This document shows, in pieces, positions 6,750 through 23,060 of a stretch of 64,000 nt of DNA (positions are counted from its first letter, which is position 1; each line of letters opens with the position of its first letter). The translations under genes and the position numbers were made by a program. The stretch is from Adineta vaga (taxonomy: Eukaryota; Animalia; Rotifera): contig CP075494.1 in the NCBI GenBank assembly GCA_021613535.1, positions 4,712,001-4,776,000 on the forward strand, written 5' to 3'. The notes under the pieces were generated by a model. It was given only the letters and a program-made list of their open reading frames with translations, was not told the origin of the DNA and did not search any database.

Positions 6750-7195
6750 TTTATAGTATAAAAATGAAAACGATACAATTTCAGAGTTTCTATGCCTCTT
6801 CTAGGCGCGATAACAGAGATAAGAAGAACGACTAACGACAAAAGTCTTGAGAATCGTATATTTTTTTATCTAAAACATCGAGATCATAATAAAAAAAAAA
6901 TCTTGGATATAGTCGGATAGCGCAAATTTAGCTATATAAAACGCTAAAATATGACTATATACAACATGTGAGTATACTGTTTGAGTCTTTTTGATAACAC
7001 TCTCAAATTAGAACAATGTTCGTCATTCGATATTGATTTGATGATTCATACCAACTTTGACCACATCTACTTATTCATTCGTCGCCTATTTAGGTTATAT
7101 AAAAATATGTCATTGACACATATCGGTCAATAAGAGAAAGCATGAATATATTTACATTTATAAGCATATAGAAATTGTCATACATAAAGATAAAT

Positions 7196-8994
7196 ATGCC
7201 ACAGTCATTTGCTCAATTAAATGATTTACCAGATGAGTTTTTTATGATTATTTTGAAGAAACTACACAATATTGAAGCACTCTATTCTTTAATAGGTTTT
7301 AATACACGACTTAATACAACTGTCCTAGATTCGATTTTTACAAGACATTTAACAATAACACGACCTTTTAATGGTTTTGATCAACTTCCTGATGCAGTAC
7401 TTGATCGGTTTTGTCTTGAAATTTTACCTAAAATCCATGATAAAATTGAATGGATTGATGTTGAATCACCGTCTTTAGAACGTGTTCTTTTTTTAATAAA
7501 CTATCCTAATTTAAATGGACTTGGTTTATATGATCTTTCATCCGAACGAGCTCGAGATCTCTTTACTAGTAAGATATCTTCAATTTTTTCGATAATTGAT
7601 TAAAATGGAACATTTAAATACATAAGAAATGAATTCATATTATAAGAAAAGAGAATAGAACAGACTATTACAATTAGTTCTTGAAAAAATCTTTCCACTG
7701 TTTATTAAGATTCAAGTTTATTAATCTCTGTTTTCAAAAGTCAACTTTCATCACTTGTTATTGAGATAAATAAATGTCAAGGACTAGAGAGTCCGGTCGA
7801 AGATATAAATATATTTATATTAACACAAATCATTACCAAGTTTACTAATTTACAATATTTAAAATATGGCGCATCTTCCTCTACTTATCATCAGTTAACA
7901 TTGTGTTCATCACTTACGAATGTCTATTCTTCAACTCTATTAGAATTACATGTCGTATTAGACTCTTATGTTGATTGTCTTTATTTACTTGATGGTCGGT
8001 TCAGTCAACTCCATACGTTGTCTGTCTTTATCTGTTCTTTCTCTGGCCCTTCATTAACGAAGATCAATAATGAAGTAAGTTACTGATATTTTTAAAACAG
8101 CTTTTTCTTATTCAGGTGCGTTTATAATACTTTTACGAAAATTAATTCTTTGTTTTCTAGAAGAAACTTCCGAATTTAAAATGCTTCTCGTTTACTCAAA
8201 ATGGAATGATATATATCTACAATACTTTTCTTGTTCCACTTTTACGGCGAATGCTAAATTTAGAACAACTCGGTTTGTATTTTATCACTGATAAATCACT
8301 TATTGATGGTTATAGTATAGAAAAAGATTTTACGAATTTCATGATAAAAATAAATCAATTCAGATTTAGTATCCATTCAAGTGTTACTGTTAATCAACAG
8401 GGTAATTTCCTATCAAATGAAGATATTCAAAACACATTCATAAATTTTAAAAACGATCGGATTATATCATCTGTTGATCATTTTTTACACGAAAATCTCT
8501 ATCATTGCCATGTTTATTCATATCCATATACATTACCATGTTATGATAACATAACAAATAATTTTCCTGGTAGATTATTTCAATGTGTTCATAAAATATC
8601 ACTAGTGGATGAACGTTCTTTTGAACATGAATTTTTTATTCAAATTGCTCAATGTTTTCCATGTCTGAAAAAATTTATCTTGCATAATCGAGAAGCACAA
8701 AAGAACGAAAATCAACAATGGTCTATCGTAAATTATCCTCATCTTATTGAACTTGATCTTGTTCGAGTTCATGAAAATTATGTTGAACAATTCTTAGATG
8801 AGAGAAAAATGTCTTTACCAAACGATGTTTATCTTCTTGTAAATTATAATATTCTAGAAAAAGTAACACACACTTTTACAAGAGATGCAACACGAATGAA
8901 TTGTTCTAAAATTAATCATTTACTACTGTTCAATGAACCAGATTTTGCTCTTAATCTAAAAGATTATTTTCCTAATGCTAAAATAGAGTGGTAG
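7196..8994 (+). CDS. F-box-like/LRR protein; 3 exons (7196-7568, ~7710-8074, 8161-8994)
   Basis: N-terminal LNDLPDEFFMIILKKL F-box-like motif; DCLYLLDGRFSQL, HVYSYPY and FEHEFFIQIAQCFP segments typical of the expanded bdelloid F-box family. GT-AG introns keep the frame. Confidence 0.8.
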
Positions 8995-9030
8995 TCGACT
9001 ATTTATTAAATAAAACTTGGAAAAGGAATT

Positions 9031-9310
9031 TCTATTATTGTATGTTTGTTTTAGTATAAAAATACGGTGAATGATGGTTTCAAAGTGAAATTCAACGATC
9101 ACCTAACTCATGATGGGTTAGTTATTCTCTAACATAAAAAATACGTTTTTAATATTTTGTTTATATGCCAAATATGATTCTTATTGAAAAGGATGGAAAG
9201 GAATTTTAGAATTAATTATTAATATTAGTGAGCGATATTATTACTGGAGGGTTGATTTTATTTATTTTCACGATATCATAGTACGTCACTAGGTATAACG
9301 AACGAAATAC
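9031..9310. repeat. Dispersed non-coding repeat; inverted copy at ~21940-22223
   Basis: Blocks tctattattgtatgtttgttttagtataaa, acctaactcatgatgggtta, gattcttattgaaaagga and ctaggtataacgaa all occur reverse-complemented at 21940-22223. Confidence 0.8.
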
Positions 9311-9774
9311 ACATATTTACTACATAATTGGTAATTGAAATTGAAATATGGAGAAAATGTATTTACTTGAAGAATAAGATGTTTTAAAAACGAGAATTTT
9401 GTCGAAATACAAGCTAATTCTTGAAAGTTACACATATGGAATATTATACGACGATAAATGAGTTCAGGAAATCCAACTGACGAGAGAAGAAACGATGAAT
9501 CTGTAAATTTGTAAATAATGCTGGAGAAGATGAACTATTTTCGTAAAAATAATCAATCGTTAATACTATATGGCTGATATTTTCTATGATTTCTTCATAT
9601 AAAATAAAAGTAAAATGAGTAAACGAGCAATATTATTTGACTAAAATTTTGAATATTTATAAATAATATGTAACACATCTTTTCTATTAACTGTAAATCG
9701 ATTTTCTTTTCATTGCTCTTTACTTAATGATTCTTATGGAATAAATGCGAACGATGAATTATAGAATATCATTT

Positions 9775-11480
9775 TTAATTGATTAAAAAAGTTTGAAGTC
9801 GAGTTTGATACAGTTTCCAAATCGTTTCGATAAATAAATCAAAATCTTCTTTAGTACTGCGATGACTTACAATACATACACGTATATAAACTCGATTTTC
9901 AATAGATGTCGAAGATGGAAATGCAATACCAGAGGAATATATATCTTTCAGAAGTTGATTATTAAATAAATTCATCTGTTCATAATCAGTTGAGTTAAAT
10001 TCTTTTGGTTCAAATCGAAAGTTAACGATATTTAATGAAACTGGACGAACAACACGTATAATGTCCTGATGTTGTTCTAATAATGATAGAAAATATTGAG
10101 CTTGTTCACAATTATCAGCAATTTTCTGACCAAGTTTTATAAGACCATGTTCTTTTAATGTACACCAGACTTTCAAAGCACGAAACGAACATGAAAGTTC
10201 AATACCTAAATTATAACACCAATGTTTATTATCGGTATTGTTTCGTTCAGGTTTAGATAAGTATGGTGAAGTCACAGCAAAAGTAGACTCAAGATCAGTA
10301 TGATCTCGAATTAATATACAACCAGCATCAAATGGACAATGCAACCATTTATGAAAGTCAAATGCTACAGAATCAGCTTGATCAATACCTGTAACCAGAT
10401 GACAACGTTGAGGATCAAGTATAACAAAGCTGCCAAATGCTCCATCGACATGAAACCAAATATTTTCTTGACGTGCAATCGAAGAAATTTCCAGAAGATT
10501 GTCAAAAGCACCCGTGTTCACTGTACCTATCGAACAAATACGTACAAAGTTCAAATCGTATCTATTTTTGTAGTTCTATTTTCTCCAGAATATTTACCTG
10601 CATTACCAATAACACAAAATGGAATAAAACCTTTCTCTCGATCACTTCTAATTGCTAGTTTTAGTTCGTCGATTTTTATTTGAAAATTTTCATCCACTGC
10701 TATGTGATGCAATGCACTAGAACCAAGACCTAATAATTCTAAGGCTTTTTGTACACATACATGTGCTTCTACGGATGCATATGCAATTAATTGTCGTTCA
10801 TGTATAAGACCATTTTTGCGAACATCAGCTAATATGCGTTGACGAGCTGCTGCCATACTAATTAAAGTAGCAATAGAGGTACCACTTACGAGTAAACCAC
10901 CTGTAATATCCTTTGGAAAGCCAAAAATTTGACGCATCCATTCAATAACTGTTCGCTCAACAAATGCAGCACTATGGGTACTTGAACAAGCATTGATGTT
11001 GATTGTCGCTGAAATCATATCTGCAAGAACACCACCTAACGTTCCTTCACCCGATACCCAACCCCAAAATCGTGGATGTACATTGCCTCTAGCATAAGGC
11101 ACAACATAATTAAATACATCACGACAAACAGACGATAAGGATTGACCTTTGCTTGGTAATGGTTCATCTTCTATAGTTGTAATCACAGTGCTGGGCATTA
11201 TTTGCGATACAGGACGATCTCGTACATATTGAATATAATCTAAAGATAGATTAAGGGTTTCATGTGCTATCAATCGAGCTGATGTCCAATCGACAGGATC
11301 GAGCGATGAGCTTTGTGTATTAGTTAATGATGTTGAAGAAGATAATTTCTCCTCTCCGATTTCATTAATTATGTTGACGATATTTCTTTTCCATTGATTC
11401 AGTGATTCAATGTCTTGTATAGGTTCATGTAATTTAACCAAAATTTGTCCAGTTAAATCTTTTAACTTTAGATCTGCCAT
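9775..11480 (-). CDS. Group II PLP-dependent amino-acid decarboxylase (aromatic-L-amino-acid/glutamate decarboxylase family), bacterial/fungal type; intron 10527-10597
   Basis: HPRFWGWV, GLLVSGTSIA, GNAG|TVNTGAFD across the intron, WFHVDGAFG, DFHKW (PLP lysine) and RALKVW motifs. Confidence 0.92.
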
Positions 11481-11851: not shown

Positions 11852-13350
11852 CTAATTCGTTCTCAAATAACAGTTCACAAGTGACATTCCATTTGTACAT
11901 GTCACTGTCACTGCATTTCCATCTTCATATGTCCATCCCACTGGTGTCGAATGTCGATCCGATAATGTTCGAATACGACAAAACGAACTTCCATCACATT
12001 TCAACTCATAATCATATGCAACTGCACCTATATCACTTTCACCTGTTTCACGACATACACTTTCATTCACTCCACTTCGATAAAAGTTCGCCATACTACC
12101 ATTGCGATCATCCATACAGTTTCCCATTCCTAACAACATCCATGTCGATGCTGCACTCACTTGTTCACTACTTGTACTACCACCAGCAGCAGCAATAAAT
12201 AAATCTAATGCAGATGATGTTGTTGCTGAATCTCGAGATGGATCACAACTATTCGATGATGATGATGTTTTATTCCACAATAACCCAAACAAACCATCAG
12301 ATTCACATCGATCTGTTGTCCAAAGTGAGATGGCATTTTGTTGAATAAAGGATCGATACTTATCAATATGCAGTGGATCTTTGAGATATGGTATGAGATA
12401 GTTAAGATGACGAATAAAGATACCTTTGAATAGTTTTTGATCATTATCACAATTTGGTTCACATGGTTCTTTGAGTATTTGACCTGAGGGTGGATAGGTC
12501 AAATGTTGAATAGTTGCATCGGCAATGTTCTGAGCAATGTTCAACAGTGTGACATTGTTTGTTGCATTTGCTAACAATGCTAATCCTGATAAGATGACAC
12601 CTTGATTGTATGTCCATGTTGTTTGATTATTGTTGAGACATGTATCATCACTAGAATAAAATTGAAAAAAGTGTTTGATTTGCTGATAGAATAAAGATCA
12701 TACGTGAGTCCATCATTGATGAGATAGTTGTTATTGATCATGTGTGTTTGTTCGAACCATTGCCATTGTTTGACAGCCCAGTCGAGGTAATAGGTAGATG
12801 GTTTGTGAAGTAGTGATGCATAGGGATGAAGACGCATGGTACTTGTGAAGAAGAGTTCATTAGTAATAGCATTTTTATATGACTTATCTGGACACCAAAA
12901 AATACCTCCTCGACAAGTTGTAACATTCCATGCTTTGTTTACTACAATATCATATATATCTGCTGCGCGATTTAAATACTTTATGTTTGGATCTATGGAA
13001 TAGGCTTGTACCCAACCTAATAACCACCATTGATAATCATCAAAACAATCTCCACCAACGAACATATCCGTTTTGACATATGTTTGATTAAATACATATT
13101 TCAACGATGTATTTCGCAGATGTAAAAAATTAGCTAGTGATTCGAGAGTATTACCTGATTGCCAGGCTAATTCATTTTTCCATATACCAGATGACTCATT
13201 ATAATAACAAGCAACGAGTCTTGTTGCTGTTATTTCTGCCCAATTCAAAGCTTCATTCGTTGAAGAAGTACCATCTACAGTTTTTGTTATTTTTGACGTA
13301 TAAATAAAAGAGATCAGTATGAAAAACGAAGAAAGTGATCGGAACACCAT
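11852..13350 (-). CDS. Secreted GH76 alpha-1,6-mannanase-like protein, copy 2; intron 12651-12703
   Basis: Same motifs as copy 1 (FDD, YKNAITNELF, WTYNQG). The 3' half, including the intron, is nearly identical to 5290-6143. Confidence 0.9.
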
Positions 13351-13910
13351 TACAGTTTAAAGAATAAGAACTCTTGTGTTGTTTGATGAAAGTCGCATAA
13401 TTCAGAGGCTCTACCTTCTCTTTACACAAAAAAACAGAGATAAGAAGAATGGTGAGATAACTTTCAAATTCATTATACCCTGTATCTGCACAGATATATT
13501 TATTGATGAAACATGTTTTTTCTTTTTCAAAGTAAATGACGAAAAAATAATATTTTGATTTATGTTTATGTAAAGAATATGACCATCGATATTTCATTAG
13601 TCTCGAAATAAATAAAAAATAAAAAGGTTGTCGATTCTTATATTTTTATTCTATACATCAATACAGTGATTTAACAAATCAAAAATAAATGGTTCTCTTC
13701 TACTGTGTATGCATTTATCTAGTCCGCTCCGCAATCAAAACAGTACGATCGATATTATGTTTTTTTCTCTTTCTCGTTCTGTTAGAGGGTATATACAGTC
13801 AAGCAAATACATGATAACATTTGCCACTGTATATTCACATACAGTCCATATATGAGATAGAAAAGTAACGTTAATACTTTTTTAGTATTGTCACCTATGT
13901 TAATCTTAGA

Positions 13911-14744
13911 ATGTCGATGAATAAAGAAAAACATTCAATTCTTGTCACTGGTGCTAATAGAGGCATTGGTTTCGTCGTAGTAAAAAAGCTTCTTGAAAAC
14001 TCATCGTCAAACAACACAACAATTCTTCTCGGTAGTCGTGATCTGAAACGTGGCCATGATGCATTGATACAGTTGAATTCTCCATCTAATGTTCATGTTC
14101 TTCAATTGGATACATCATCGCATGAAAGTATAATTCATGCCATCGATGAAATCAAACAAAATTATGGTGGTCATATAGATATTGTTATAAATAATGCAGC
14201 GATTTCAACAACAGAAATTAGTGTTCCTACTGCTCGTGAATTATTTGCAACGAATTATTATGGTATTAAAAAGTTAAATGAATATATTATTCCGCTTATG
14301 CAACCAAATGGTCGAATCATTAATGTTTCTAGTCGAGTTGGCTTGAATACATTACAAGAATCTTCTGAAGCTATTCAAGAGAAATTTACTTCTTCGACAT
14401 TAACTCAAGATCAACTTGATCAATTAGTTGAAGATTTCATTTCAGGCATAGAAACGAACAATCTGGAGAATCTTGGTTATAATTCCAAATCAAAGTTCTT
14501 TGTATATGGTGTTAGTAAAATGGCACTAAATACACTTACAAAAATTGAAGCACGTCAATGGTCCAATACAAAAAATTTACTTTTTCTCAGTGTTACACCT
14601 GGATTTTGTGCAACAGATATGACGAATCATGCTTCCGATGCTCGCTCAGCTGAAGCTGGTGCAGATTCTATTTTATACGTCGTTAATGCTCCTCAAAATG
14701 AATTACAAAATGGTGGATTTTATCGTGATGGACTACAATTGTAG
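13911..14744 (+). CDS. Short-chain dehydrogenase/reductase, carbonyl-reductase-like
   Basis: TGANRGIG Rossmann motif, NNAA, IINVSS, YGVSK (YxxxK) and VTPGFCATDM. No intron. Confidence 0.92.
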   Translation: MSMNKEKHSILVTGANRGIGFVVVKKLLENSSSNNTTILLGSRDLKRGHDALIQLNSPSNVHVLQLDTSSHESIIHAIDEIKQNYGGHIDIVINNAAISTTEISVPTARELFATNYYGIKKLNEYIIPLMQPNGRIINVSSRVGLNTLQESSEAIQEKFTSSTLTQDQLDQLVEDFISGIETNNLENLGYNSKSKFFVYGVSKMALNTLTKIEARQWSNTKNLLFLSVTPGFCATDMTNHASDARSAEAGADSILYVVNAPQNELQNGGFYRDGLQL

Positions 14745-15155
14745 ACTAATGACAATATTTTTTCCATATTTTTTACCGACAAACATTGTTTTTATTGTAC
14801 GTTTGTATGATTCTCTTCCTTTTGATTCATGGTGAGAATGTATGTAATCTTACCGTTGTTTGTGCAATAACGATGAAAGAACGCTCGTTACAATTGTGTC
14901 CATGTTTCATATTTGTCCTTGAGATAAACAATGATTGTTTTTGTATTTTTTATGGTTTTAGCAAATTGTACAAATATAATAAACCTAGGTTGAGCCCTTT
15001 TGTACTCAAATATATCTTTTTTTTATCCTTCGTATAAGATCATTATTCTTCTCGTTTGTACTTATTCGAGGCCAGGTGTGAAAATCTTCTCGATAAATAT
15101 CAAGTACAAAAGATCCAAGTATAAATAAACTTTGGTTGTAGGTTTTTGGTTAATA

Positions 15156-15620
15156 ATGGAGAAAAACGAGATTATCTGTCTGTTGGGTAATCATGGTTGT
15201 GGTAAATCAAATGTATCTCAATTGATCAATTCAAAGCAGGAAAATGGTAAGATCATTGCTATTGAAAATAATGACGAATTGGCGTCTCAATATGGTTTTG
15301 ATCCAAGTTCAATCACTAAATTGATATTTGAATATCCATTTGATGATGACAATTTCAAGAAAATCATCTTACCCGATCGAACATACAATAATCAACAAAT
15401 CTATTGGATTATTTTAGACTGTGACACTGAAATACTTCTGAAAAGAATTCCATTACGATCAAAACAAGATATTTGGCAAACACGAAAAGCATTACATTAT
15501 TATCAGCAACGTTATCGTCATTTGAGTGCTCATTTTGGTATACCATTTCTTGATACAACTCATTTGAATTCAGAACAAGTTGCTACTCAAATCCTTGATA
15601 TTATTCAAAAATATCCAAAT
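15156..15620 (+). other. Domain of fusion: P-loop nucleotide/shikimate-type kinase-like
   Basis: IICLLGNHGCGKS Walker A; WIILDCDTEILLKRI lid-like segment; PFLDTTHLNSEQVATQILDII C-terminal motif. Boundaries approximate. Confidence 0.65.
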
Positions 15621-18600
15621 TATTATCATTATTATCGTCAAATTGGTACACAAATTTTGACGTATGAAATAATTGAAAAAAATAATCTTGAAAATCATCT
15701 TTATCAGATTATTAAATCTGATTCAATTCCAGATTTACCTGAATATGTTGATGAATTTCCAATTATCGATCAACAAAAGTTATATACAAGATGGTATGTA
15801 ACTCATCATTCATTGGAAATCGATCACGAGAAGAATCTTCTTCGAATTGGAGTTTATAACTTATCAATTACAGGACCTATATTTAAACTTGTGATTGAAG
15901 GTGAATCAAAAAAGATCTATAAAGACATCAGTGGAAATCCAATAACAGAAAATTTAGCATTTATTGTATTGAAATCGACTATTTATTCCCATTCTAAGCA
16001 GATAACAGGAGAGATCAACACACTCGGATCCATTCGCGCATGTGGTTCTCAATTATTTTTGGAAATGATTTGGCGAAATGATTTAAAACATTCCTATCGT
16101 TCAATAAATTCCAATGGTATTATTATAAGTGATTTTGTTGATAAAATTTCTCCAATTGAAATTATTGTCAAACGATATTGTGAAGGAACCGATAAAAATT
16201 CATATTATGGAATTTTACAAAATGAAAATATCGTTTCATTGAATACCAATGAAGAATATCGATCTGGTCCTTATGTAAGATTTGATTGGAGGAATCCGAA
16301 TCATATTTCACCAACTACAAAGAGAGCATTGAGTGAAAATATATATTATTATATTTATGAACAATCAGTTGGTAAAGAAGAATTTTTCAAGAAAATTCTA
16401 TCAAATAAACAGTACGCAGTACCGGTAAGGAATGAATTGTCAAAAGATAGTTTTATCGATATGTTTTAGATGGGTGATAAAAATATCAGTGAAGATCTTC
16501 TAACTGATGTTATTGATATAAAACAAACAAGATTAGCAGTTTTAAAAATGTTTATGATCATTCAATCGTATTTTTCTCGTATTAATTTAATAATAAAAGA
16601 TGTTTGTTTTATGCTTGATGAAAATGGTGAACAATTCTGGAGTGAAATTAATCAAGATTGTATGAGAATTACAATGAAAGATGAGAATCAAACAAAATTT
16701 GATAAAGATATATGGCGTACAGGTGGAACATCATCATCTAAACAAATCTTACAGAAATGGAATGATTTTAATCAATTATTTCAAGAATATTTTCGAAAAA
16801 ATCGATTTCATCAAACAGAATTATTCAATTTTAATTCGTATTTCTATCAAGAAGAAATTTACCGATTATTAAGAGATAAAAATCTAACAATTCCAAAACA
16901 TTTACAACAGTTATGGTTAAATATTCAAGGTAAAACTCCTCGTCGAATTCTTGTGACTATGGATATGTTCAATGGACAACCAGTATTAGTCAAAAGTTCA
17001 CAAGTTTGTGAAATTCATAGTAATGGAGATTATCGACACGCAATAGAGAAACTTTCAATCTTTCCTGATATATTAATCGTTGATCTTGATGGTGCTTTTG
17101 GTGAGATCGATACAATGAATCGTCAAATTATTAAACAATTAGCTCAGAAATATTATGTTCATACAGGTGGTGGTTTACGATCGTTAACTGATCTTGAAGA
17201 AATGTTGAATTCAGGTATTCGTCGATGTGTAATGGCAAGTGGTGAAGATTCGCTGATTGAAAAGATGCCTAAAGATCGTTTGATTGTTGAAATTAGTATC
17301 AATGAACAAAATGAAGTACTTATTCATGGACGTCGAACAAATACACATGTGAATATCATGACGAGAATTCATCAATTGATTGCAATTGGTGTAAATGTCA
17401 TTAGTATTACTTTCGTTCAAACTGAAGGTCATTTATCGGGAATTCCTCGTCAACAAATACATGATTTGATTTTACAAATTCCACATGAAATGGAAAAAAT
17501 ATACATAGCTGGTGGAGTTAGTTCATTGGATGATTTGGATTATTTATGGTCATTTCCTCGTGTAATTCCAATACTTGGATCAGCGATATGGAAGAATAAA
17601 TTGACAATTGGAAATATTTATAATCGAATGATATACTTTGATGAAAATGGTCTTGTACCAGCGATTCTTCAAGATAGAAATGGATTAGTCAAAGGTTTAT
17701 GTTATATGAATGAAGAAGCAATCGATAAAACCTGTGAAAATCGAGTTTTATATCGATATTCAAGAAAATTACGACGCATAATTATGAAAGGTGAAACATC
17801 AGGTGATTTACAACAGATAATTCAACTTAGTCTCGATTGTGATTCTGATGCAATATTAGTTACTGTTGATTCACAGAAACCATTTTGTCACACAGGAAAT
17901 CATAGTTGTTTCGATATACAAACAAGTTCCAAATCTAATCTTGCTACTCTAGCTGATCATATTCAATCGCGAATGCTTACAAGTAGTTATACAGGAAAAA
18001 TACAACAGAATCCGTCATTAGCTTTAGTGAAAATCATGGAAGAATTTTGGGAAATTGTTGCTGCAAATCAAGATAATCAACTAGTAGAATGTAGTGATCT
18101 ACTTGTTCATTTGATAATGTATTTAAATGGAATAGGAGTATCGATTGAAGATGTTTATAATGAATTAAATCGACGAAGATGGATGGCAAGATGTTTGATG
18201 CCAACATTGATAGAAGAGAAATCAAAAGAAATTATCATTGGAATAACAAATTCTAAATATACGAATAAAACAGATGAATTTGCTGAAAAAGAATTAGGTA
18301 TACGAATCATTCGACAACCAGGTCGTAATCTTCATGTCAGTGGACAAATAGTTGATGGAGAAAAATTTTGTCAATATTTCGGTTCGGATACCAATTTTCA
18401 GTTTTCATTATTTCCAAGTAAACCAAAAGATATGAAATGGTTATTAGGAGCACAACGTGTAACACACATCATTACATTTGATACTATTATGAAGAATTAT
18501 CCGAAGATATATTCTCTTGTTCATGAAATAATTGATCCGACGATTTGTGTTGCATTTCTACGTCGACAAGGTGAAACTATTGAACCAGGAAAATGGACGA

Positions 18601-18887
18601 AGAAAAATAAAGCATTCATTGCTACTGAACATATCTGTCAAGTAACAAGATTTTTGGAAGAAAAAAATGTCAATCGAGAAACATATCATTTGGATAAAAT
18701 CACTGGATCATCAGAAGGATTTTTAGTCAATACAAAGAAATATTTATTGGCTGATGCAATTGTTGAAAGTGGAAGAACAGTGAAAGAAAATCAATTAGAA
18801 ATATGGAAAGTCATTGTACCAAGAGGAGAAATACACATTGGACTTTATGAATTTATCCATATGAAGAATATGAAGCAAGATGAATAG
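15156..18887 (+). CDS. Multifunctional fusion, ~1228 aa: P-loop kinase-like + SAICAR synthetase (PurC)-like + HisA + HisI (PRA-CH) + HisE (PRA-PH) + short HisG (ATP-PRT); 2 exons (15156-16424, 16470-18887)
   Basis: A 45-nt phase-0 GTAAGG...TTTTAG intron joins ORFs 15132 and 16470. Domain motifs are given in the sub-features below. Confidence 0.85.
15882..16780 (+). other. purC: Domain of fusion: SAICAR synthetase (PurC)-like ATP-dependent ligase
   Basis: IEGESKKIY, PIEIIVKRYCEGT, IIKDVCF, WSEINQDCMRI and FDKDIWR correspond to the PurC motifs EGK.K.IY, P.E.VVR...G, D.K.EF, DEI.PD..R and DKD.FR. Spans the intron; boundaries approximate. Confidence 0.75.
16938..17612 (+). other. hisA: Domain of fusion: HisA-like TIM barrel (ProFAR isomerase)
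   Basis: LVTMDMFNGQPVLV, IVDLDGAFG, TGGGLRS, TEGHLSG, IAGGVSSLDDL and ILGSAIW motifs. Confidence 0.8.
17631..18179 (+). other. hisIE: Domains of fusion: phosphoribosyl-AMP cyclohydrolase followed by phosphoribosyl-ATP pyrophosphohydrolase
   Basis: HisI motifs: FDENGLVPAILQD, YMNEEA, YSR, KGETSG, DCDSDA and CHTGNHSCF. HisE motifs: SSYT, KIMEEFWE, ECSDLLVHL and EDVYNELNRR. Confidence 0.92.
18231..18860 (+). other. hisG: Domain of fusion: short-form ATP phosphoribosyltransferase-like (no C-terminal regulatory domain)
   Basis: KPKDM, ITFDT, IATEH, GSSEG and LADAIVESGRTVKENQL resemble HisG R..DI, G.D, IATKY, GSVE and ADAIVD.V.TG.TL..NGL. The protein ends shortly afterwards. Confidence 0.75.
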
Positions 18888-19782
18888 ATTAGTAACAGAC
18901 AGAAAAAGAATTTTATTTATGCCTTTTTTTATCCATGTTTTCTAGCAACTTTGATGTATTATTCAAACAGGAAATTCATATTCGTATTCGTATTTTAAAG
19001 ACTTAGCTTTAAGTGATGAAACAATGAATCAAATCTTAAGGTTTCTTCACATTTCCTTTGATAATCAATCTTAGAAATAACAATTTAAGTTATTCCATTG
19101 AGAGGTTGTGTCCATCGTTGAAAATGATCGTATAAGATCAAAAATTTCGTTATTTCTATTAAATAGTGTCTGACTTGCTATTGTTATAACTAGTTCGATG
19201 TTAGAACATCAAATGACTGATAATTCTAGCAACATTATGTCAAAGTCTATATTCAAGTAACGATTGCTGATAACACATAAAATTGAAGAAGCATTGAAAG
19301 ACAGTGCACCAGCAAGTCATGATTGTCTTTACTTTGGGACAACTTTTATCAGCATCTCCTTTAGCAGATGAAAATACACAACAACTTTTAAGTAAACATG
19401 CATATGGCTAGAATCGACAGCTGATAATTAGGATTGAAATGGTCAAAGGTTTTGATGATGATGATACAATTCGTTGGACAATAGATGAGAAAGTTTCCAT
19501 TGCTATAATGCTCTGAAAAAGAATCTAAAATAATAACTTGATCTACTCTGAACAAAAACTACTATTCATTTAGTGTACGTTTTTTTATAGTGCTTTTTCT
19601 TATTCTGTAACTATATGTTGTCCATACAGATGACGTATAAGAGAACCACGTGTGTTTTTGTATATGCCGTGTTGCGAAAGGTTGTGCAATAGGTTATGAT
19701 AAGGAAAGAATATATATATATATATATTATTCTTACAAAACACATTACTTTGACGACATCGAGCGTATCAGCAGTTTATATT

Positions 19783-20838
19783 ATGGCTTGTACAGGAAAT
19801 AACACACTTGATGACAATAAATCTCCTACCGAAGTGGAAGTACTATTTGATGCCGTTGAAACAAATAATATAGCTGCTGTGGAGCGATTTACAAAAGATG
19901 AACTCAAACGTTTATGTCAAGTTCGTCATTTATTCGTTTCTGCATGGTCATCACCAGAAAAAGAAAAACAAACAGCTTATCAACGTGCTTGCCTTCTTGG
20001 TCGTACAAATATTGTCCAATGCATGTTAAATGCAGGTGTTCAAGTCGATCAAATTTATGCAGGTGGTAATTCAGGATACACAATGCGTGGCGCGTTTCTT
20101 TTTGCTTGTCAATCACGTTCCATGCCAACTATATTTGCACTACTCAATGCAGGTACACCCATCGAAGAATTAGGCTCATGTTCTCTCAGTCATGCTGACA
20201 TTTTTATACCTGGTGTTTCATTTCAAAACCTTTCAGCCTCTTGGGAAAATATCTATCCAATTCACTTTGCTATCGTTGATAATAATTTGGAATTATTACA
20301 AAAATTACTTACATCTCATACAAACAAGTTGCTTACAATTCATTGTTTTACTCCTTTGCATATCGCATGTCTTTTCAATCGATCAATCACCATGATTGAC
20401 CTATTACTTTCATATGGAAATGCAAATGAAGCAATCATAGCTAAAACAAGTAGTAATAAGTTTCCTGATCAGTTAGCTACTGATCAAATAATCATTGATT
20501 ATCTTCGACCTACACGTCTGTTGGCCTATGCAGAAATGGAGAAAAAACGTCAGCAAGATGAGGCGAATGATTTGAAGTTACTTGAAGAAGGAGTCAGCTT
20601 TCAAATATTTATTTTAACTCTAACTGGTAAAACATTGACAATGATTGTTAAAGGAGAAGACACTGTCGAGGTTTTAAAAGAGAAAATTGATGGCAAAGAA
20701 AATATTCCATCTGACCGTCAGCGAATTATCTATGCTGGAAAGGAACTTCAAAATGGCCGTACACTTTCTGACTATGATATTACTAAACATGTGAATCTCC
20801 ATCTTGTTATAAATTTAAATGGCGGATATACACATTGA
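19783..20838 (+). CDS. Ankyrin-repeat protein with C-terminal ubiquitin-like domain ending LNGG-YTH
   Basis: Ankyrin motifs TAYQRAC, YPIHFAI and TPLHIAC. The C-terminal [12 protein letters not shown]...[30 protein letters not shown] aligns with ubiquitin. Probable start ATG 19783. Confidence 0.9.
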
Positions 20839-20879
20839 GAATATTTTTTTTGTCATTATTTCATTCTAGATTAATTTTT

Positions 20880-21839
20880 ATGCAAGTGATGAACCAAAGC
20901 GTCGAAGATCTACCCGATGAATTATTCTTGTATATTTTCACTTTTCTCCAACCTAAAGATCTTTTTAATGGATGGTATAATTTAAATTATCGTATCAATA
21001 CAATTGTGTGTTCAACTCACATTCATATTACCATCAAAGATAATGATGATTTCAATGGTTTCCTGCCTTATTTCAAACACTTTTCTTCACAAATTACACA
21101 TCTGAAAGATGAACGTTTCTTTCCAAATCCTAAGATTGACCTATGTTCATTACCTAACATTCAATTTCTCTATTTAACGCAATGTTCAAACGAACAACTT
21201 CAAAATATTCATCCTAACAATCAGTCTTATTTAACTCATTGTTTTTTGTTATCAGCAACATGGCAATTCTATGAGAGAATTCTTTTTGGACAACCGCGTT
21301 TTCCTCATCTTATGTCAATTGGTTGCCCAAGAAGTGGTTCTATTTATCTACTAAATGTAACGCATGCTACGAATAAAATAATTCGTCGCCTTCACCTACA
21401 ATCAGCATCACCAGAAATTCTTTATAAATTTATTGAATATCTTCCGTGTATTACTTCATTGATAATTAATTATTTCTATGAAAATAATTCATCTTCTCCA
21501 ACATTATTTACAAATTCAAAGATTCATCGTTTAACTATTGTTCATCCATTATCATCTCAACTGTGTTTCGACCAGCTTCTCTCGTCAGTTGGATTTCCTG
21601 AACTCATTTATCTTCGTATAACATTCGGTATGTGCGACTTTCAAGAATTAGCTTGTATTCTGACAAAATTCTCGCGTTTAAAACATTTTATTCTTCAAGT
21701 GAATACATTCACTCCAGATTTCAATTTAAATGCTACTCGTCTTATAAGTTCTTGGTTTACATCATTGAATTATAAACGCTTTGTCAATAAATCGAAGGAT
21801 GAGCAAGCTGTTCTAATTAGCAACACCCAGATATATTGA
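20880..21839 (+). CDS. F-box-like/LRR protein
   Basis: VEDLPDELFLYIFTFL..KDLFNGWYNLNYRIN F-box motif followed by LRR-like LxxL repeats. Confidence 0.8.
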   Translation: MQVMNQSVEDLPDELFLYIFTFLQPKDLFNGWYNLNYRINTIVCSTHIHITIKDNDDFNGFLPYFKHFSSQITHLKDERFFPNPKIDLCSLPNIQFLYLTQCSNEQLQNIHPNNQSYLTHCFLLSATWQFYERILFGQPRFPHLMSIGCPRSGSIYLLNVTHATNKIIRRLHLQSASPEILYKFIEYLPCITSLIINYFYENNSSSPTLFTNSKIHRLTIVHPLSSQLCFDQLLSSVGFPELIYLRITFGMCDFQELACILTKFSRLKHFILQVNTFTPDFNLNATRLISSWFTSLNYKRFVNKSKDEQAVLISNTQIY

Positions 21840-22223: not shown

Positions 22224-22397
22224 TGAGAATATCTTCATTATCTTTTTCGTACTAAAAGAATTCACTTGACTAAAAGCTATAAAATAAAAAAATAAACATA
22301 TTAAAAGAATATGATTTCTTACTTTCCAGGTCAAATGGACTCTATTCGAAATTATACCGATACTCCCCTTACCAAAAGGTTTTTTTACCCTTCTATC

Positions 22398-23060
22398 AAA
22401 TCGTGAATGCTTACAAGTAGTTATACAGGAAAAATACAACAGAATCCGTCATTAGCTTTAGTGAAAATCATGGAAGAATTTTGGGAAATTGTTGCTGCAT
22501 ATCAAGATAATCAACTAGTAGAATGTAGTGATCTACTTGTTCATTTGATAATGTATTTAAATGGAATAGGAATATCGATTGAAGATGTTTATAATGAATT
22601 AAATCGACGAAGATGGATGGCAAGATGTTTGATGCCAACATTGATAGAAGAGAAATCAAAAGAAATTATCATTGGAATTACAAATTCTACATATACCAAT
22701 AAAACAGATCAATTTGCTATAAAAACAATATTTCGGTTCGGATACCAATTTTCAGTTTTCATTATTTCCAAGTAAACCAAAAGATATGAAATGGTTATTA
22801 GGAGCACAACGTGTAACACACATCATTACATATGATTTCATCTGATCATCAGAAGGATTTTTAGTCAATACAAACAAATATTTATTGGTTGTTGCCACTG
22901 TTAAAAGTAGAAGAACAAAAAAAAGGATATCAATTAGTAATATGGAGAGTTAATGTAGCAAAAAGAAAGGAGAAATACATATTGGACTTTATGAATATAT
23001 TCATATGATAAATACTATGCAAAATGAATGAAGAAATTGACAGAACGAAAAAGATTTTTA
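22398..23060 (+). pseudogene. Truncated duplicate of the 3' (HisE-HisG) part of the His/Pur fusion gene
   Basis: 22405-22720 is near-identical to 17971-18290. After that come two internal deletions, frameshifts and increasing divergence up to the old stop/3' UTR. Confidence 0.9.

What the first reader, a model, noticed from the sequence alone, without database searches (positions are those of the whole stretch)
15156..18887. Six-domain kinase-PurC-HisA-HisI-HisE-HisG megaenzyme encoded by an intron-containing gene in an apparent animal genome
Seen: one 45-nt GT-AG intron joins a ~1228-aa ORF carrying, in order, a Walker-A kinase-like domain, a SAICAR-synthetase-like domain, HisA, HisI, HisE and HisG. 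Established: HisG, HisE, HisI and HisA catalyse the first four steps of histidine biosynthesis (ATP + PRPP to PRFAR); animals lack this pathway; the familiar fusions are HisIE and fungal HIS4 (HisI-E-D). HisF/H, HisB, HisC and HisD are absent from the protein and from this window. Inference: this is not ordinary His biosynthesis. It looks like a self-contained assembly line that opens the adenine ring to PRFAR (an aminoimidazole-carboxamide ribotide) and passes it to a PurC-like ATP-dependent amide ligase and a kinase. It could make an undescribed AICAR/imidazole-nucleotide metabolite or signal, or act as an ATP-to-AICAR shunt. Probably horizontally acquired.
Basis: partly seen in the sequence, partly recalled or inferred. 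Interest (0 to 1): 0.93.

Follow-up and report, generated by a model that had tools for sequence, protein, structure and literature searches.

The report
Rotifer Cns3-like pentostatin-pathway megaenzyme
A bdelloid rotifer carries an expressed, spliced gene, apparently captured from a giant virus, that is a longer relative of the fungal enzyme Cns3 (needed to make the adenosine-deaminase-inhibiting drug pentostatin) and includes the histidine-pathway steps an animal otherwise lacks.

Summary
Window 15156-18887 (+) is one gene of Adineta vaga. Exon 1 is 423 aa, a 45-nt GT..AG intron lies at 16425-16469, and exon 2 is 805 aa. Together they equal the annotated 1228-aa protein I4U23_023280.

Contigs from three public runs (two studies) show the spliced form. 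Domain order is P-loop kinase, SAICAR-synthetase-like, HisA, HisI, HisE, short HisG. The genome shows no HisD, HisB or HisF, so this is not ordinary histidine synthesis.

The protein is homologous to Cordyceps militaris Cns3 (CCM_04438; BLASTP E 4e-91 and 2e-47), the kinase-HisG protein required for pentostatin. In bacteria, pentostatin and coformycin likewise need a HisG homolog, a SAICAR-synthetase homolog and an SDR.

The rotifer form keeps intact HisA/I/E domains that Cns3 lacks. All domains are under purifying selection (dN/dS 0.07-0.19).

The same six-domain protein occurs in Klosneuvirinae giant viruses and many virus-like metagenome contigs. Bdelloid genes nest inside a Fadolivirus-containing clade (support 100).

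Best reading (about 0.6): a self-sufficient route from ATP (or dATP) and PRPP to a coformycin/pentostatin-type diazepine nucleotide. Orthology to bacterial PenC/CofB could not be tested, and the product is unproven. I class it as a new variant of a known kind.

The parts
13911..14744 (+). Short-chain dehydrogenase/reductase (277 aa) 411 nt upstream on the same strand. It is a candidate, not proven, for the 8-keto reductase step (the PenB/CofA role).
   Evidence: Pfam adh_short E 5.6e-28. It belongs to the large metazoan carbonyl-reductase-1-like family with many rotifer paralogs. An SDR also sits directly upstream of the ortholog in A. ricciae and was duplicated along with it. No SDR lies within 10 kb in Rotaria sp. 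Silwood1 or in the viral loci. It is transcribed.
15156..15755 (+). Exon 1, first part: N-terminal P-loop nucleoside/nucleotide-kinase-like domain (aa 1-200).
   Evidence: Walker A is GNHGCGKS, with G11, G16 and K17 invariant in the family. Weak Pfam AAA_18 hit. AF2 model pLDDT 89; best PDB folds are AK6/hCINAP and guanylate, adenylate and deoxyadenosine kinases, E 5e-4. It aligns with the NK domain of Cns3.
15756..16424 (+). Exon 1, second part: N-terminal half of the SAICAR-synthetase-like domain (aa 201-423).
   Evidence: Invariant EGESK, STIYSHSKQ and RFDWRNPNH motifs. The AF2 model of aa 201-578 has pLDDT 88.9, and its top 38 PDB matches are all SAICAR synthetases.
16425..16469 (+). 45-nt spliceosomal intron (GT..AG). 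It is in frame and ends in TAG.
   Evidence: Sequence. Exon 1 plus exon 2 equals P0001, and viral homologs have no insert here. Contigs of X7 and X2 skip it, and an X1 contig joins 16424 to exon 2.
16470..16934 (+). Exon 2: C-terminal half of the SAICAR-synthetase-like domain plus linker (aa 424-578).
   Evidence: Pfam SAICAR_synt covers aa 424-514 of P0001, 27.6 bits against a cut-off of 20. D467, E482, D486, R489 and DKD.WR are invariant in 54 homologs.
16935..17630 (+). HisA (ProFAR isomerase) domain, aa 579-810.
   Evidence: Pfam His_biosynth E 1.8e-21; TIGR00007. D588 and both GG phosphate sites are conserved. The second catalytic acid is Glu697 in 52 of 54 homologs, where Salmonella HisA has Asp.
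17631..17930 (+). HisI (PR-AMP cyclohydrolase) domain, aa 811-910.
   Evidence: Pfam PRA-CH E 3.9e-25. The DCDxD and C-H..S-C metal motifs are conserved.
17931..18200 (+). HisE (PR-ATP pyrophosphohydrolase) domain, aa 911-1000.
   Evidence: Pfam PRA-PH 30 bits against a cut-off of 21.3; NF002747 HisIE E 6.9e-43. The EExxE and ExxD..H motifs are conserved.
18201..18887 (+). Short-form HisG (ATP phosphoribosyltransferase) domain, aa 1001-1228, plus the stop codon. The protein ends soon after the PRPP loop, so there is no C-terminal regulatory domain.
   Evidence: TIGR00070 hisG matches exon-2 residues 635-783. The genome-wide HisG scan scores 26.9 bits, over the cut-off. The PRPP loop D..V.SG.T...N is conserved. 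The region aligns at 31% identity with the HisG end of Cns3, E 2e-47.
22392..23028 (+). Decayed partial duplicate of the 3' third of the gene (aa 920-1228), with stop codons.
   Evidence: the genome search 'own' with P0001 found three fragments at 92, 90 and 57% identity, carrying TGA and TAA stops.

Best explanation
The gene encodes a self-sufficient, extended ortholog of fungal Cns3.

Proposed mechanism. The HisG domain couples PRPP to ATP (or dATP). HisE, HisI and HisA convert the adduct to the ring-opened HisA product (PRFAR or its deoxy form). Instead of passing it to HisF/H, which the rotifer lacks, the SAICAR-synthetase-like domain cyclises it, as CofB does in Streptomyces, to an 8-keto-(deoxy)coformycin 5'-phosphate. 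A reductase, possibly the SDR next door in Adineta, and a phosphatase would finish a coformycin/pentostatin-class inhibitor of adenosine or AMP deaminase. The N-terminal kinase either supplies or recycles the adenine nucleotide substrate, or phosphorylates adenosine as reported for Cns3.

Origin. The gene came from a Klosneuvirinae-like giant virus into the bdelloid ancestor, gained introns, and is kept by selection.

Shown: gene structure, splicing, domain content, homology to Cns3, absence of the downstream His pathway, purifying selection, and nesting within the viral clade.

Inferred: the chemistry of the SAICAR-like domain, the product, and the roles of the kinase and the SDR.
For: (1) Homology to Cns3. 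A profile of kinase-SAICARlike-HisG proteins retrieves CCM_04438 of Cordyceps militaris at E 1.6e-173 and P0001 at 9e-208. Direct BLASTP of P0001 against Cns3 gives aa 7-572 vs 9-571 at 33% identity, E 4e-91, and aa 917-1219 vs 574-871 at 31% identity, E 2e-47. The Cns3 locus shows the published neighbours: an oxidoreductase, an HD protein and a PDR ABC transporter.

(2) Literature. Cns3 is required for pentostatin, via its HisG part, and for 3'-AMP, via its kinase part (PMC8719641, PMC12648386). Bacterial pentostatin needs PenA (HisG homolog), PenB (SDR) and PenC (SAICAR synthetase homolog) (PMC12648386, PMC8706298). The adechlorin/pentostatin cluster also recruits a HisA homolog (PMC13055916). 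The CofB reaction on the HisA product is my own recollection of Ren et al. 2020, PNAS 117:10265; that paper was not readable here.

(3) Independent genomic linkage. The SAICAR-like family is fused or adjacent to HisG, P-loop kinase and HisA/I/E in at least five different orders.

(4) The SAICAR-like domain has the PurC fold but forms a separate family. Its profile finds only 315 proteins among 1.84 billion representatives, so the very numerous canonical PurC clusters are evidently not reached. The housekeeping PAICS genes lie elsewhere in the genome.

(5) The genome has no HisD, IGPD or HisF.

(6) Catalytic motifs of all six domains are conserved in 54 homologs. dN/dS is 0.07-0.19 per domain. 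The spliced transcript exists.

(7) An SDR lies directly upstream in both A. vaga and A. ricciae.

(8) Bdelloids form one clade (support 100), sister to P0024 (100), and then to the Fadolivirus clade (100). The contexts of related contigs look like giant viruses.
Against: No authentic PenC or CofB sequence could be obtained, so it is unknown whether they belong to this SAICAR-like family. The best 80 prokaryotic relatives include no Streptomyces. Among 400 sampled Actinomycetes genomes, only the one used as the centre had a hit.

Cns3's chemistry has not been reconstituted in vitro according to the papers I could read, and none of them mentions its SAICAR-like domain.

The SDR is an ordinary metazoan CBR1-type paralog. 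It is not linked to the gene in Rotaria, in viruses, or in most prokaryotic operons.

The prokaryotic operons carry Ham1/ITPase, and some loci carry PurA. That would also fit a role in purine interconversion.

The HisA domain has Glu for the second catalytic Asp, and Arg where Salmonella HisA has Trp145, so its substrate or reaction may differ.

No Cns1, Cns2 or Cns4-type partners were found in the rotifer with the queries used.
Confidence: 0.6

Rival explanations
1. Purine interconversion or salvage shunt. The enzyme burns ATP and PRPP down to PRFAR, and the PurC-like domain releases or derivatises the AICAR moiety (ZMP/AICAR or a SAICAR-like compound). This feeds IMP/GMP synthesis or makes an AICAR-type signal. 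It is the first reader's idea.
For: Ham1/ITPase is the most constant neighbour in prokaryotic operons. An adenylosuccinate-synthetase-like gene sits next to the viral gene in Bodo saltans virus and next to the operon in L008. Many carriers are CPR or DPANN episymbionts and predatory bacteria, which from general knowledge often have reduced nucleotide metabolism. No SDR is conserved with the gene.
Against: The only characterised homolog, Cns3, is tied to pentostatin (PMC8719641, PMC12648386). The PurC fold is not known to cleave PRFAR. A. vaga has normal PAICS genes and adenosine/AMP-deaminase-family genes, so it needs no such shunt. Spending ATP and PRPP to make AICAR is wasteful.
Confidence: 0.17
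2. Kinase-centred nucleoside-analogue pathway as in Cordyceps. The main product is 3'-AMP leading to a cordycepin-like toxic nucleoside, and the His/PurC-like part only makes the protecting deaminase inhibitor.
For: In Cns3 the kinase domain is reported to make 3'-AMP for cordycepin (PMC8719641). The kinase domain is conserved in nearly all forms of the family.
Against: No Cns1 or Cns2 homolog was found in the A. vaga genome with the C. militaris proteins as queries, and none is seen next to the viral or prokaryotic genes. The kinase travels with HisG and the SAICAR-like gene even where no cordycepin genes exist, which suggests a role within the same pathway.
Confidence: 0.08
3. Ordinary first half of histidine biosynthesis, completed by other rotifer genes or by food or microbiota.
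For: HisG, HisE, HisI and HisA are all intact and conserved.
Against: No HisD, IGPD or HisF is present in the 100.8-Mb assembly, while the same searches hit all 14 control genomes. PRFAR is a phosphorylated intermediate that is not exchanged between organisms (general knowledge). The His domains are permanently fused to a kinase and a PurC-like domain, and the protein is homologous to Cns3.
Confidence: 0.03

Closest known systems
Cns3 (CCM_04438) of Cordyceps militaris, the 'bifunctional cordycepin biosynthesis protein' of the cns1-cns4 cluster that also yields pentostatin
   Same: It has the same N-terminal P-loop kinase, the same SAICAR-synthetase-like domain and linker (33% identity over about 590 aa, E 4e-91), and the same C-terminal short HisG (31% identity, E 2e-47). 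It falls in the same protein family in the trees.
   Different: Cns3 has 871 aa and lacks the HisA and HisI domains (P0001 aa 573-916 have no counterpart). The segment of Cns3 that aligns with HisE does not keep the EExxE motif. Fungi have their own histidine pathway to supply those steps, whereas the rotifer does not. No Cns1, Cns2 or Cns4 partners were found in the rotifer. In the tree, the fungal clade is nested among six-domain proteins, so Cns3 looks like a reduced form.
Bacterial pentostatin, coformycin and adechlorin clusters: PenA (HisG homolog), PenC/CofB/AdeA (SAICAR synthetase homologs), PenB/CofA (SDR), AdeK (HisA homolog)
   Same: The same set of recruited enzyme families is present: HisG, a PurC-like enzyme, sometimes HisA, and an SDR (PMC12648386, PMC8706298, PMC13055916). 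The pathway logic is also the same, branching from the early histidine pathway.
   Different: Here everything except the reductase is on one polypeptide, and a kinase is added. The neighbouring SDR is a metazoan CBR1-type gene linked only in Adineta. Sequence relationship to PenC or CofB could not be tested.
Six-domain proteins of Klosneuvirinae giant viruses, annotated as 'phosphoribosyl-ATP pyrophosphatase' (Fadolivirus algeromassiliense, P0016) or 'bifunctional PR-AMP cyclohydrolase/PR-ATP pyrophosphatase' (Bodo saltans virus, P0065)
   Same: They have the same length and domain order, at 54% and 41% identity (identity to exon 2). Bdelloid genes nest with the Fadolivirus clade.
   Different: The viral genes have no intron and no adjacent SDR. 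The rotifer gene has one intron in Adineta and apparently at least three in Rotaria, is AT-rich like its host, and lies between ordinary rotifer genes.
Known histidine-pathway fusions: HisIE, fungal HIS4 (HisI-HisE-HisD), and long or short HisG
   Same: The HisI-HisE order is the same as in HisIE (NF002747, E 6.9e-43). The HisG is of the short form.
   Different: The HisA-HisI-HisE-HisG order joined to a kinase and a PurC-like domain is not a histidine-synthesis architecture. HIS4-type proteins appear only as distant hits that cover about a quarter of the query.

Membership tests
Cns3-type kinase/SAICAR-like/HisG proteins | Significant full-length sequence homology to C. militaris CCM_04438 | tested here: met
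   BLASTP E 4e-91 (aa 7-572) and E 2e-47 (aa 917-1219). Both proteins hit one profile strongly.
Cns3-type kinase/SAICAR-like/HisG proteins | N-terminal nucleoside/nucleotide kinase domain | tested here: met
   Walker A is conserved. The AF2 fold matches small-molecule P-loop kinases. Substrate was not tested.
Cns3-type kinase/SAICAR-like/HisG proteins | C-terminal HisG-family domain | tested here: met
   TIGR00070 and PF01634 hits; PRPP loop conserved.
Cns3-type kinase/SAICAR-like/HisG proteins | Clustered with Cns1 (oxidoreductase), Cns2 (HD phosphohydrolase) and Cns4 (ABC exporter) | tested here: not met
   The cns locus was recovered in C. militaris. No Cns1 or Cns2 homolog was found in A. 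vaga with those queries, and none is among the flanking genes scanned (window 8.2-26 kb).
Cns3-type kinase/SAICAR-like/HisG proteins | Produces pentostatin and/or 3'-AMP | not testable with these tools
   Needs enzymology or metabolomics.
Bacterial PenABC / CofAB diazepine-nucleoside pathway | HisG homolog plus SAICAR-synthetase homolog encoded together | tested here: met
   Both lie on one polypeptide. Fold confirmed.
Bacterial PenABC / CofAB diazepine-nucleoside pathway | Dedicated NAD(P)H short-chain dehydrogenase (PenB/CofA) in the cluster | tested here: inconclusive
   An SDR is adjacent in A. vaga and A. ricciae. It is a CBR1-family paralog and is absent next to the Rotaria and viral genes.
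Bacterial PenABC / CofAB diazepine-nucleoside pathway | SAICAR-like enzyme orthologous to PenC/CofB | not tested
   No named PenC or CofB sequence was reachable. There is no Streptomyces among the best 80 prokaryotic loci, and no hit in 400 sampled Actinomycetes.
Canonical histidine biosynthesis | Steps 1-4 (HisG, HisE, HisI, HisA) present | tested here: met
Canonical histidine biosynthesis | Downstream enzymes (HisF/H, HisB, HisC, HisD) present in the genome | tested here: not met
   There is no PF00815 hit and no PF00475 hit. The only PF00977 hit is this gene's HisA domain. HisH and HisC were not searched.
Canonical SAICAR synthetase (PurC/PAICS) | PurC fold and Pfam SAICAR_synt match | tested here: met
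   27.6 bits against a cut-off of 20. The top 38 Foldseek PDB hits are all PurC or PAICS.
Canonical SAICAR synthetase (PurC/PAICS) | Groups with housekeeping PurC and serves de novo purine synthesis | tested here: not met
   The family profile finds only 315 proteins among 1.84 billion, far fewer than canonical PurC alone would give. PDB PurC proteins score only E about 4e-6. PAICS-type genes lie elsewhere in the genome. The domain is always tied to HisG and a kinase.

The most novel reading that the evidence does not exclude
A single-polypeptide pathway from ATP and PRPP to a diazepine nucleotide (a deaminase inhibitor) is an old and widespread invention. It would be carried by many giant viruses, perhaps to protect the adenylate pool of the infected cell or to block host deaminases. 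It was captured once by bdelloid rotifers, making them animals that synthesise a pentostatin/coformycin-class compound. In fungi it was reduced to Cns3. In CPR bacteria, DPANN archaea and predatory bacteria it appears as a HisAIE-HisG-SAICARlike-Ham1-kinase operon. The kinase and Ham1 would then be unrecognised core parts of this chemistry.
Probability: 0.35. Interest if true: 0.85.

Novelty: new variant of a known kind. Interest (0 to 1): 0.72.

Why it matters
Pentostatin is a clinical drug, and coformycin-type compounds are among the tightest-binding known inhibitors of adenosine and AMP deaminases. Their biosynthesis has so far been described only in actinomycetes and a few fungi.

If this reading is right, three things follow. 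An animal makes such a compound with a gene taken from a giant virus. Dozens of giant-virus lineages carry the complete route on one protein, which would point to manipulation of host purine metabolism. The six-domain protein would also be a ready-made, self-contained catalyst for producing these nucleosides in hosts that lack a histidine pathway.

The finding also reinterprets Cns3. Its unmentioned middle part is a PurC-like domain, probably the ring-forming enzyme, and Cns3 looks like a reduced descendant of the six-domain form.

Finally, it adds a clean, well-supported case of virus-to-animal transfer, followed by intron gain, to the bdelloid record of horizontal gene transfer.

Tried and rejected
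- The Ren et al. 2020 paper (PMC7229688) is not held. A search for '8-ketocoformycin'/'CofB' returned only unrelated papers.
- phmmer of the exon-1 part of the SAICAR-like domain alone against the PDB found nothing. phmmer of the HisG domain alone against the PDB also found nothing. phmmer of the kinase domain found only Walker-A matches to ABC proteins.
- The listing of cluster members gave almost no names for metagenomic relatives.
- The ESM Atlas search confirmed only SAICAR_synt-like neighbours from CPR bacteria.
- PenC/CofB hunt: the genome-contig scan with bacterial members returned CPR, Myxococcota, Bdellovibrionota, Planctomycetia, Bacteroidota and others, but no Streptomyces. A sample of 400 Actinomycetes genomes gave no further member at E 1e-25. 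This is a sample, not proof of absence.
- Defence-system idea: there is no PADLOC model for the SAICAR-like or HisG parts.
- Cordycepin branch: no Cns1 or Cns2 was found in the rotifer.
- Literature: no held paper links bdelloids or giant viruses with pentostatin, coformycin or cordycepin. No paper was found discussing the viral gene. The A. vaga spaceflight transcriptome paper does not mention this gene.
- One call failed on a parameter slip ('of' needs a G handle) and was corrected.

Full report
**1. What is in the sequence**

ORF listing shows two ORFs in the same frame, 15132..16469 and 16470..18887, separated by one TAG. The stretch 16425..16469 starts with GT, ends with AG and is 45 nt long.

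Inside one script the two exon translations were compared, as a string equality only, with a database protein that the exon-2 search had returned. That protein is P0001, 'hypothetical protein I4U23_023280 [Adineta vaga]', 1228 aa. Exon 1 (15156..16424, 423 aa) followed by exon 2 (16470..18884, 805 aa) is identical to it. From then on P0001 was used by its id.

The genome is therefore that of the bdelloid rotifer A. vaga: 100.8 Mb in 6 pieces, with the window at C5:4712001-4776000.

**2. The intron is real and the gene is expressed**

Intronless homologs from giant viruses align across the junction without any gap (..KP|FGDK..).

Logan contigs of public runs were laid on 13800-18950:
- A 1119-nt contig of run X7 and a contig of X2 skip exactly 45 nt with GT..AG ends.
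- A contig of X1 ends at 16424 and goes on with the first 16 letters of exon 2.
- The X7 contigs tile 15140-18950.

These runs come from two studies. Their RNA nature is the tool's guess, but a precise GT..AG skip of a stretch that the genome assembly retains is what cDNA looks like. Contigs cannot give expression levels.

**3. Domains**

Pfam and NCBIfam hits on P0001 and the exons:

| Domain | Residues | Score |
|---|---|---|
| P-loop (AAA_18, weak) | 7-104 | E 0.0013, 19.6 bits (cut-off 29.4) |
| SAICAR_synt | 424-514 | 27.6 bits (cut-off 20) |
| His_biosynth / HisA | 582-801 | E 1.8e-21 |
| PRA-CH / HisI | 833-904 | E 3.9e-25 |
| PRA-PH / HisE | 917-992 | 30.2 bits (cut-off 21.3) |
| HisG (TIGR00070) | about 1058-1206 | E 3.7e-6 |

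Two AlphaFold models built from family alignments are confident:
- The SAICAR-like part (aa 201-578) has pLDDT 88.9. Its 38 best PDB matches are all SAICAR synthetases or PAICS, with E down to 1e-11 and target TM-score up to 0.80.
- The N-terminal 200 residues have pLDDT 89.2 and resemble small-molecule P-loop kinases (AK6/hCINAP and guanylate, adenylate and deoxyadenosine kinases; E 5e-4).

In an alignment of 54 full-length homologs the diagnostic motifs of every domain are almost invariant:
- Kinase: Walker A.
- HisA: D588 and both GG phosphate sites.
- HisI: DCDxD and C-H..S-C.
- HisE: EExxE and ExxD..H.
- HisG: PRPP loop D..V.SG.T...N.
- SAICAR-like domain: a set of its own motifs (EGESK, RFDWRNPNH, D467, E482, D486, R489, DKD.WR).

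One peculiarity stands out. The second catalytic acid of HisA is Glu in 52 of 54 proteins, where Salmonella HisA has Asp, and the Trp145 position holds Arg.

The protein ends shortly after the PRPP loop. The HisG is therefore the short form, without the C-terminal regulatory domain.

**4. Not histidine synthesis**

The whole genome gives no match to histidinol dehydrogenase (PF00815) or IGP dehydratase (PF00475). The same searches hit all 14 control genomes. The only His_biosynth (HisA/HisF) match and the only HisG match are this gene.

Housekeeping PAICS-type SAICAR synthetase genes lie elsewhere, at C2:4019657 and C5:13431478.

**5. What it is related to**

The exon-2 search found the same roughly 1220-1270-aa architecture in three kinds of source:
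- All sequenced bdelloid genera: Adineta ricciae and A. steineri, Rotaria spp., and a partial Didymodactylos protein (62-79% identity among the rotifer homologs).
- Giant viruses: Fadolivirus algeromassiliense (54% identity), an 'uncultured virus' on a 1.6-Mb contig (44%), and Bodo saltans virus (41%).
- Dozens of metagenome contigs.

The contexts of several of these are dense, intronless and rich in ORFans. They carry tRNA synthetase, DnaJ, SET, dsRBD and protein-kinase genes, which is giant-virus-like.

A profile of shorter relatives (about 900-1090 aa; kinase, SAICAR-like, HisG) then retrieved named fungal proteins. Among them was 'hypothetical protein CCM_04438 [Cordyceps militaris CM01]', which UniRef calls 'Bifunctional cordycepin biosyn...', at E 1.6e-173. 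This is Cns3. Its locus shows the published neighbours: a GFO/IDH/MocA oxidoreductase (Cns1), an HD protein (Cns2) and a PDR ABC transporter (Cns4).

Direct BLASTP of the rotifer protein against Cns3 gives two blocks:
- aa 7-572 against 9-571: 33% identity, E 4e-91 (kinase, SAICAR-like domain, linker).
- aa 917-1219 against 574-871: 31% identity, E 2e-47 (HisE region and HisG).

Residues 573-916 (HisA and HisI) have no counterpart in Cns3. The Cns3 segment aligned to HisE does not keep the EExxE motif.

**6. What is known about these relatives (from papers read here)**

- Cns3 has an N-terminal nucleoside/nucleotide kinase reported to make 3'-AMP for cordycepin, and a C-terminal HisG domain needed for pentostatin (PMC8719641, PMC12648386).
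- In Streptomyces, pentostatin needs PenA (HisG homolog), PenB (SDR) and PenC (SAICAR synthetase homolog). PenB and PenC were used to mine coformycin clusters (PMC12648386, PMC8706298).
- The adechlorin/pentostatin cluster also recruits a HisA homolog, AdeK (PMC13055916).
- From my own memory of Ren et al. 2020 (PNAS 117:10265, cited in PMC12648386 but not readable here): coformycin branches from the histidine pathway after HisA. The PurC homolog CofB cyclises that intermediate to 8-ketocoformycin 5'-phosphate, releasing ammonia and erythronate-4-phosphate. The SDR CofA reduces it, and a phosphatase finishes.

None of the Cns3 papers I could read mentions a SAICAR-like domain in Cns3.

**7. 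Independent genomic support for a HisG / PurC-like / kinase pathway**

A profile of the SAICAR-like domain searched against 1.84 billion representative proteins finds only 315 proteins. The very numerous canonical PurC clusters are evidently not reached. PDB PurC proteins score only about E 4e-6.

The hits show the domain fused in many different orders:
- HisG, kinase, SAICAR-like
- kinase, SAICAR-like, HisG
- SAICAR-like, Ham1, HisG
- HisA, HisI, HisE, HisG, SAICAR-like

Unfused versions form a recurrent operon: HisA-HisIE, HisG, SAICAR-like, Ham1 (ITPase family), P-loop kinase. It occurs in Parcubacteria, Saccharibacteria, Uhr-, Falkow- and Vogelbacteria, Polyangiaceae/Myxococcales, Bdellovibrionota, Planctomycetia and Woesearchaeota.

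A second type runs SAICAR-like, kinase, HisG, sometimes followed by HisA and HisIE. It occurs in Aquimarina, Chitinophaga, Bacteroidales and archaea.

So many independent arrangements tie these activities into one pathway. They also show that the kinase belongs to it even where no cordycepin genes exist. Ham1 may stand in for HisE where HisE is missing, or it may clean up a triphosphate; this is inference.

**8. Origin**

A tree of the SAICAR-like domain was built from 130 rows with IQ-TREE (LG+G4, SH-aLRT support) and rooted on the prokaryotic members.
- Bdelloids form one clade (99), sister to the virus-like contig protein P0024 (99).
- These join a clade containing Fadolivirus (94).
- The fungal Cns3 clade (100) is nested among six-domain proteins, sister to P0067 and P0247 (99). 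P0247 lies on a 1.02-Mb virus-like contig.

A tree of the full-length proteins (66 rows, 1235 columns) gives support of 100 for each of three nodes: bdelloids; bdelloids plus P0024; and that pair plus the Fadolivirus clade.

This fits a single transfer from a Klosneuvirinae-like virus into the bdelloid ancestor. It also fits Cns3 being a reduced derivative. Both inferences depend on the rooting and on a quick search without bootstraps.

After transfer the gene gained introns. There is one in Adineta. In Rotaria sp. Silwood1 the tblastn match breaks at two further places.

It is under purifying selection in every domain. A. vaga against A. ricciae gives dN/dS of 0.07-0.19, although dS of 0.7-1.5 is close to saturation.

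A decayed copy of the last third lies at window 22392-23028. A. ricciae has tandem partial copies.

**9. The neighbouring SDR**

The gene at 13911-14744 is an adh_short protein on the same strand, 411 nt upstream, and it is transcribed.

In A. ricciae an SDR again sits directly upstream, and the SDR-plus-gene unit has been duplicated. This would fit the PenB/CofA role.

However, the SDR is one of many metazoan carbonyl-reductase-1-like paralogs. None lies within 10 kb of the Rotaria gene or of the viral genes. I treat it as a candidate only.

**10. Mechanism proposed and its status**

| Status | Statement |
|---|---|
| Shown | One spliced, conserved gene with six intact domains |
| Shown | Homology to Cns3 |
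| Shown | No downstream histidine pathway in the genome |
| Shown | Nesting within a giant-virus clade |
| Inferred | HisG, HisE, HisI and HisA make the ring-opened HisA product from ATP or dATP plus PRPP |
| Inferred | The PurC-like domain cyclises it to an 8-keto-diazepine nucleotide |
| Inferred | A reductase and a phosphatase finish a coformycin/pentostatin-class deaminase inhibitor |
| Inferred | The kinase feeds or recycles the adenine nucleotide |

The rotifer has at least four adenosine/AMP-deaminase-family loci. Any such product would meet targets both in the animal and in what it eats or is attacked by. What the compound is for, whether chemical defence, protection of another nucleoside or control of adenosine, is open.

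**11. Rivals**

- A purine-interconversion or AICAR shunt is kept alive by the Ham1 and PurA neighbours, but it has no biochemical precedent for a PurC fold.
- A cordycepin-type pathway lacks Cns1 and Cns2.
- Ordinary histidine synthesis is excluded by the missing genes.
- A known anti-phage defence system is not supported.

**12. Limits**

- No authentic PenC or CofB sequence could be reached, so membership of those enzymes in this family is untested.
- Cns3's chemistry rests on genetics described in reviews.
- RNA evidence comes from contigs whose RNA status is guessed.
- The trees are quick searches.

**13. Verdict**

The interpretation needs correcting. This is not a wholly new kind of pathway. 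It is an extended, self-sufficient variant of the Cns3/PenAC/CofB logic for diazepine nucleosides, sitting in an animal and widespread in giant viruses, where it appears to be unrecognised (annotated only as a histidine enzyme; no paper found).

Noticed in passing
window 22392-23028 (+): A decayed partial duplicate of the 3' third of the gene (aa 920-1228). It is in three fragments at 92, 90 and 57% identity with TGA and TAA stops, about 3.5 kb downstream of the intact gene.
   Followed up: partly
L010 (Adineta ricciae contig CAJNOJ010000447.1) 3471-15334: The SDR-plus-megaenzyme unit is tandemly duplicated. The order is SDR, partial copy (aa 1-516), SDR, full gene, then a copy of aa 429-1223 annotated as a 939-aa gene. 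GH76 and VWA7 flank it, as in A. vaga.
   Followed up: partly
L015-L043, L054 (prokaryotic genome contigs); L007, L008: A recurrent operon of HisA-HisIE, HisG, SAICAR-like, Ham1/ITPase and P-loop kinase occurs in CPR bacteria, Myxococcota, Bdellovibrionota, Planctomycetia and Woesearchaeota. I could find no description of it. One bacterial contig also has a histidine-phosphatase-family gene and a CTP_transf_like gene after Ham1.
   Followed up: partly
L068/L069 (Aquimarina) 6347-11269; L064 (Arthrobacter sp. HY1533) 6389-9679: A second operon type in cultured bacteria. In Aquimarina it has a 469-aa protein with a Pol-beta nucleotidyltransferase motif, the SAICAR-like gene, a MazE/AbrB-like small protein, a P-loop kinase and HisG, with an SDR on the other strand. 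The Arthrobacter locus shows only an unannotated 485-aa ORF, the SAICAR-like gene and a P-loop kinase. There is no PADLOC match for the core genes.
   Followed up: partly
L002 (Bodo saltans virus) 6860-7870: A short (336 aa) adenylosuccinate-synthetase-like gene lies directly upstream of the viral six-domain gene. A full-length PurA also abuts the operon in L008.
   Followed up: no
P0415 (Cns3) aa 216-578 and 574-660: The middle of fungal Cns3, which the papers I read describe only as kinase plus HisG, is a SAICAR-synthetase-like domain (Pfam 26.8 bits). It is followed by a segment that aligns with HisE but lacks its EExxE motif. In the tree the fungal clade is nested among six-domain virus-like proteins.
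   Followed up: partly
window 9775-11480 (-) and 11852-13350 (-): A PLP-dependent decarboxylase and a GH76 glycosidase are each split into two ORFs, presumably by short introns. GH76 is a fungal/bacterial-type family, so it may be another foreign gene next to this one.
   Followed up: no
window 19696-21839 (+): An ankyrin-plus-ubiquitin-domain ORF (380 aa) is followed immediately by an F-box ORF (334 aa) in an overlapping frame. They may be one intron-containing gene.
   Followed up: no
P0048 (EukProt, Nyctotherus ovalis transcriptome): A full six-domain homolog (1229 aa) appears in a ciliate transcriptome. It could be a ciliate gene, a virus of the ciliate, or contamination.
   Followed up: no
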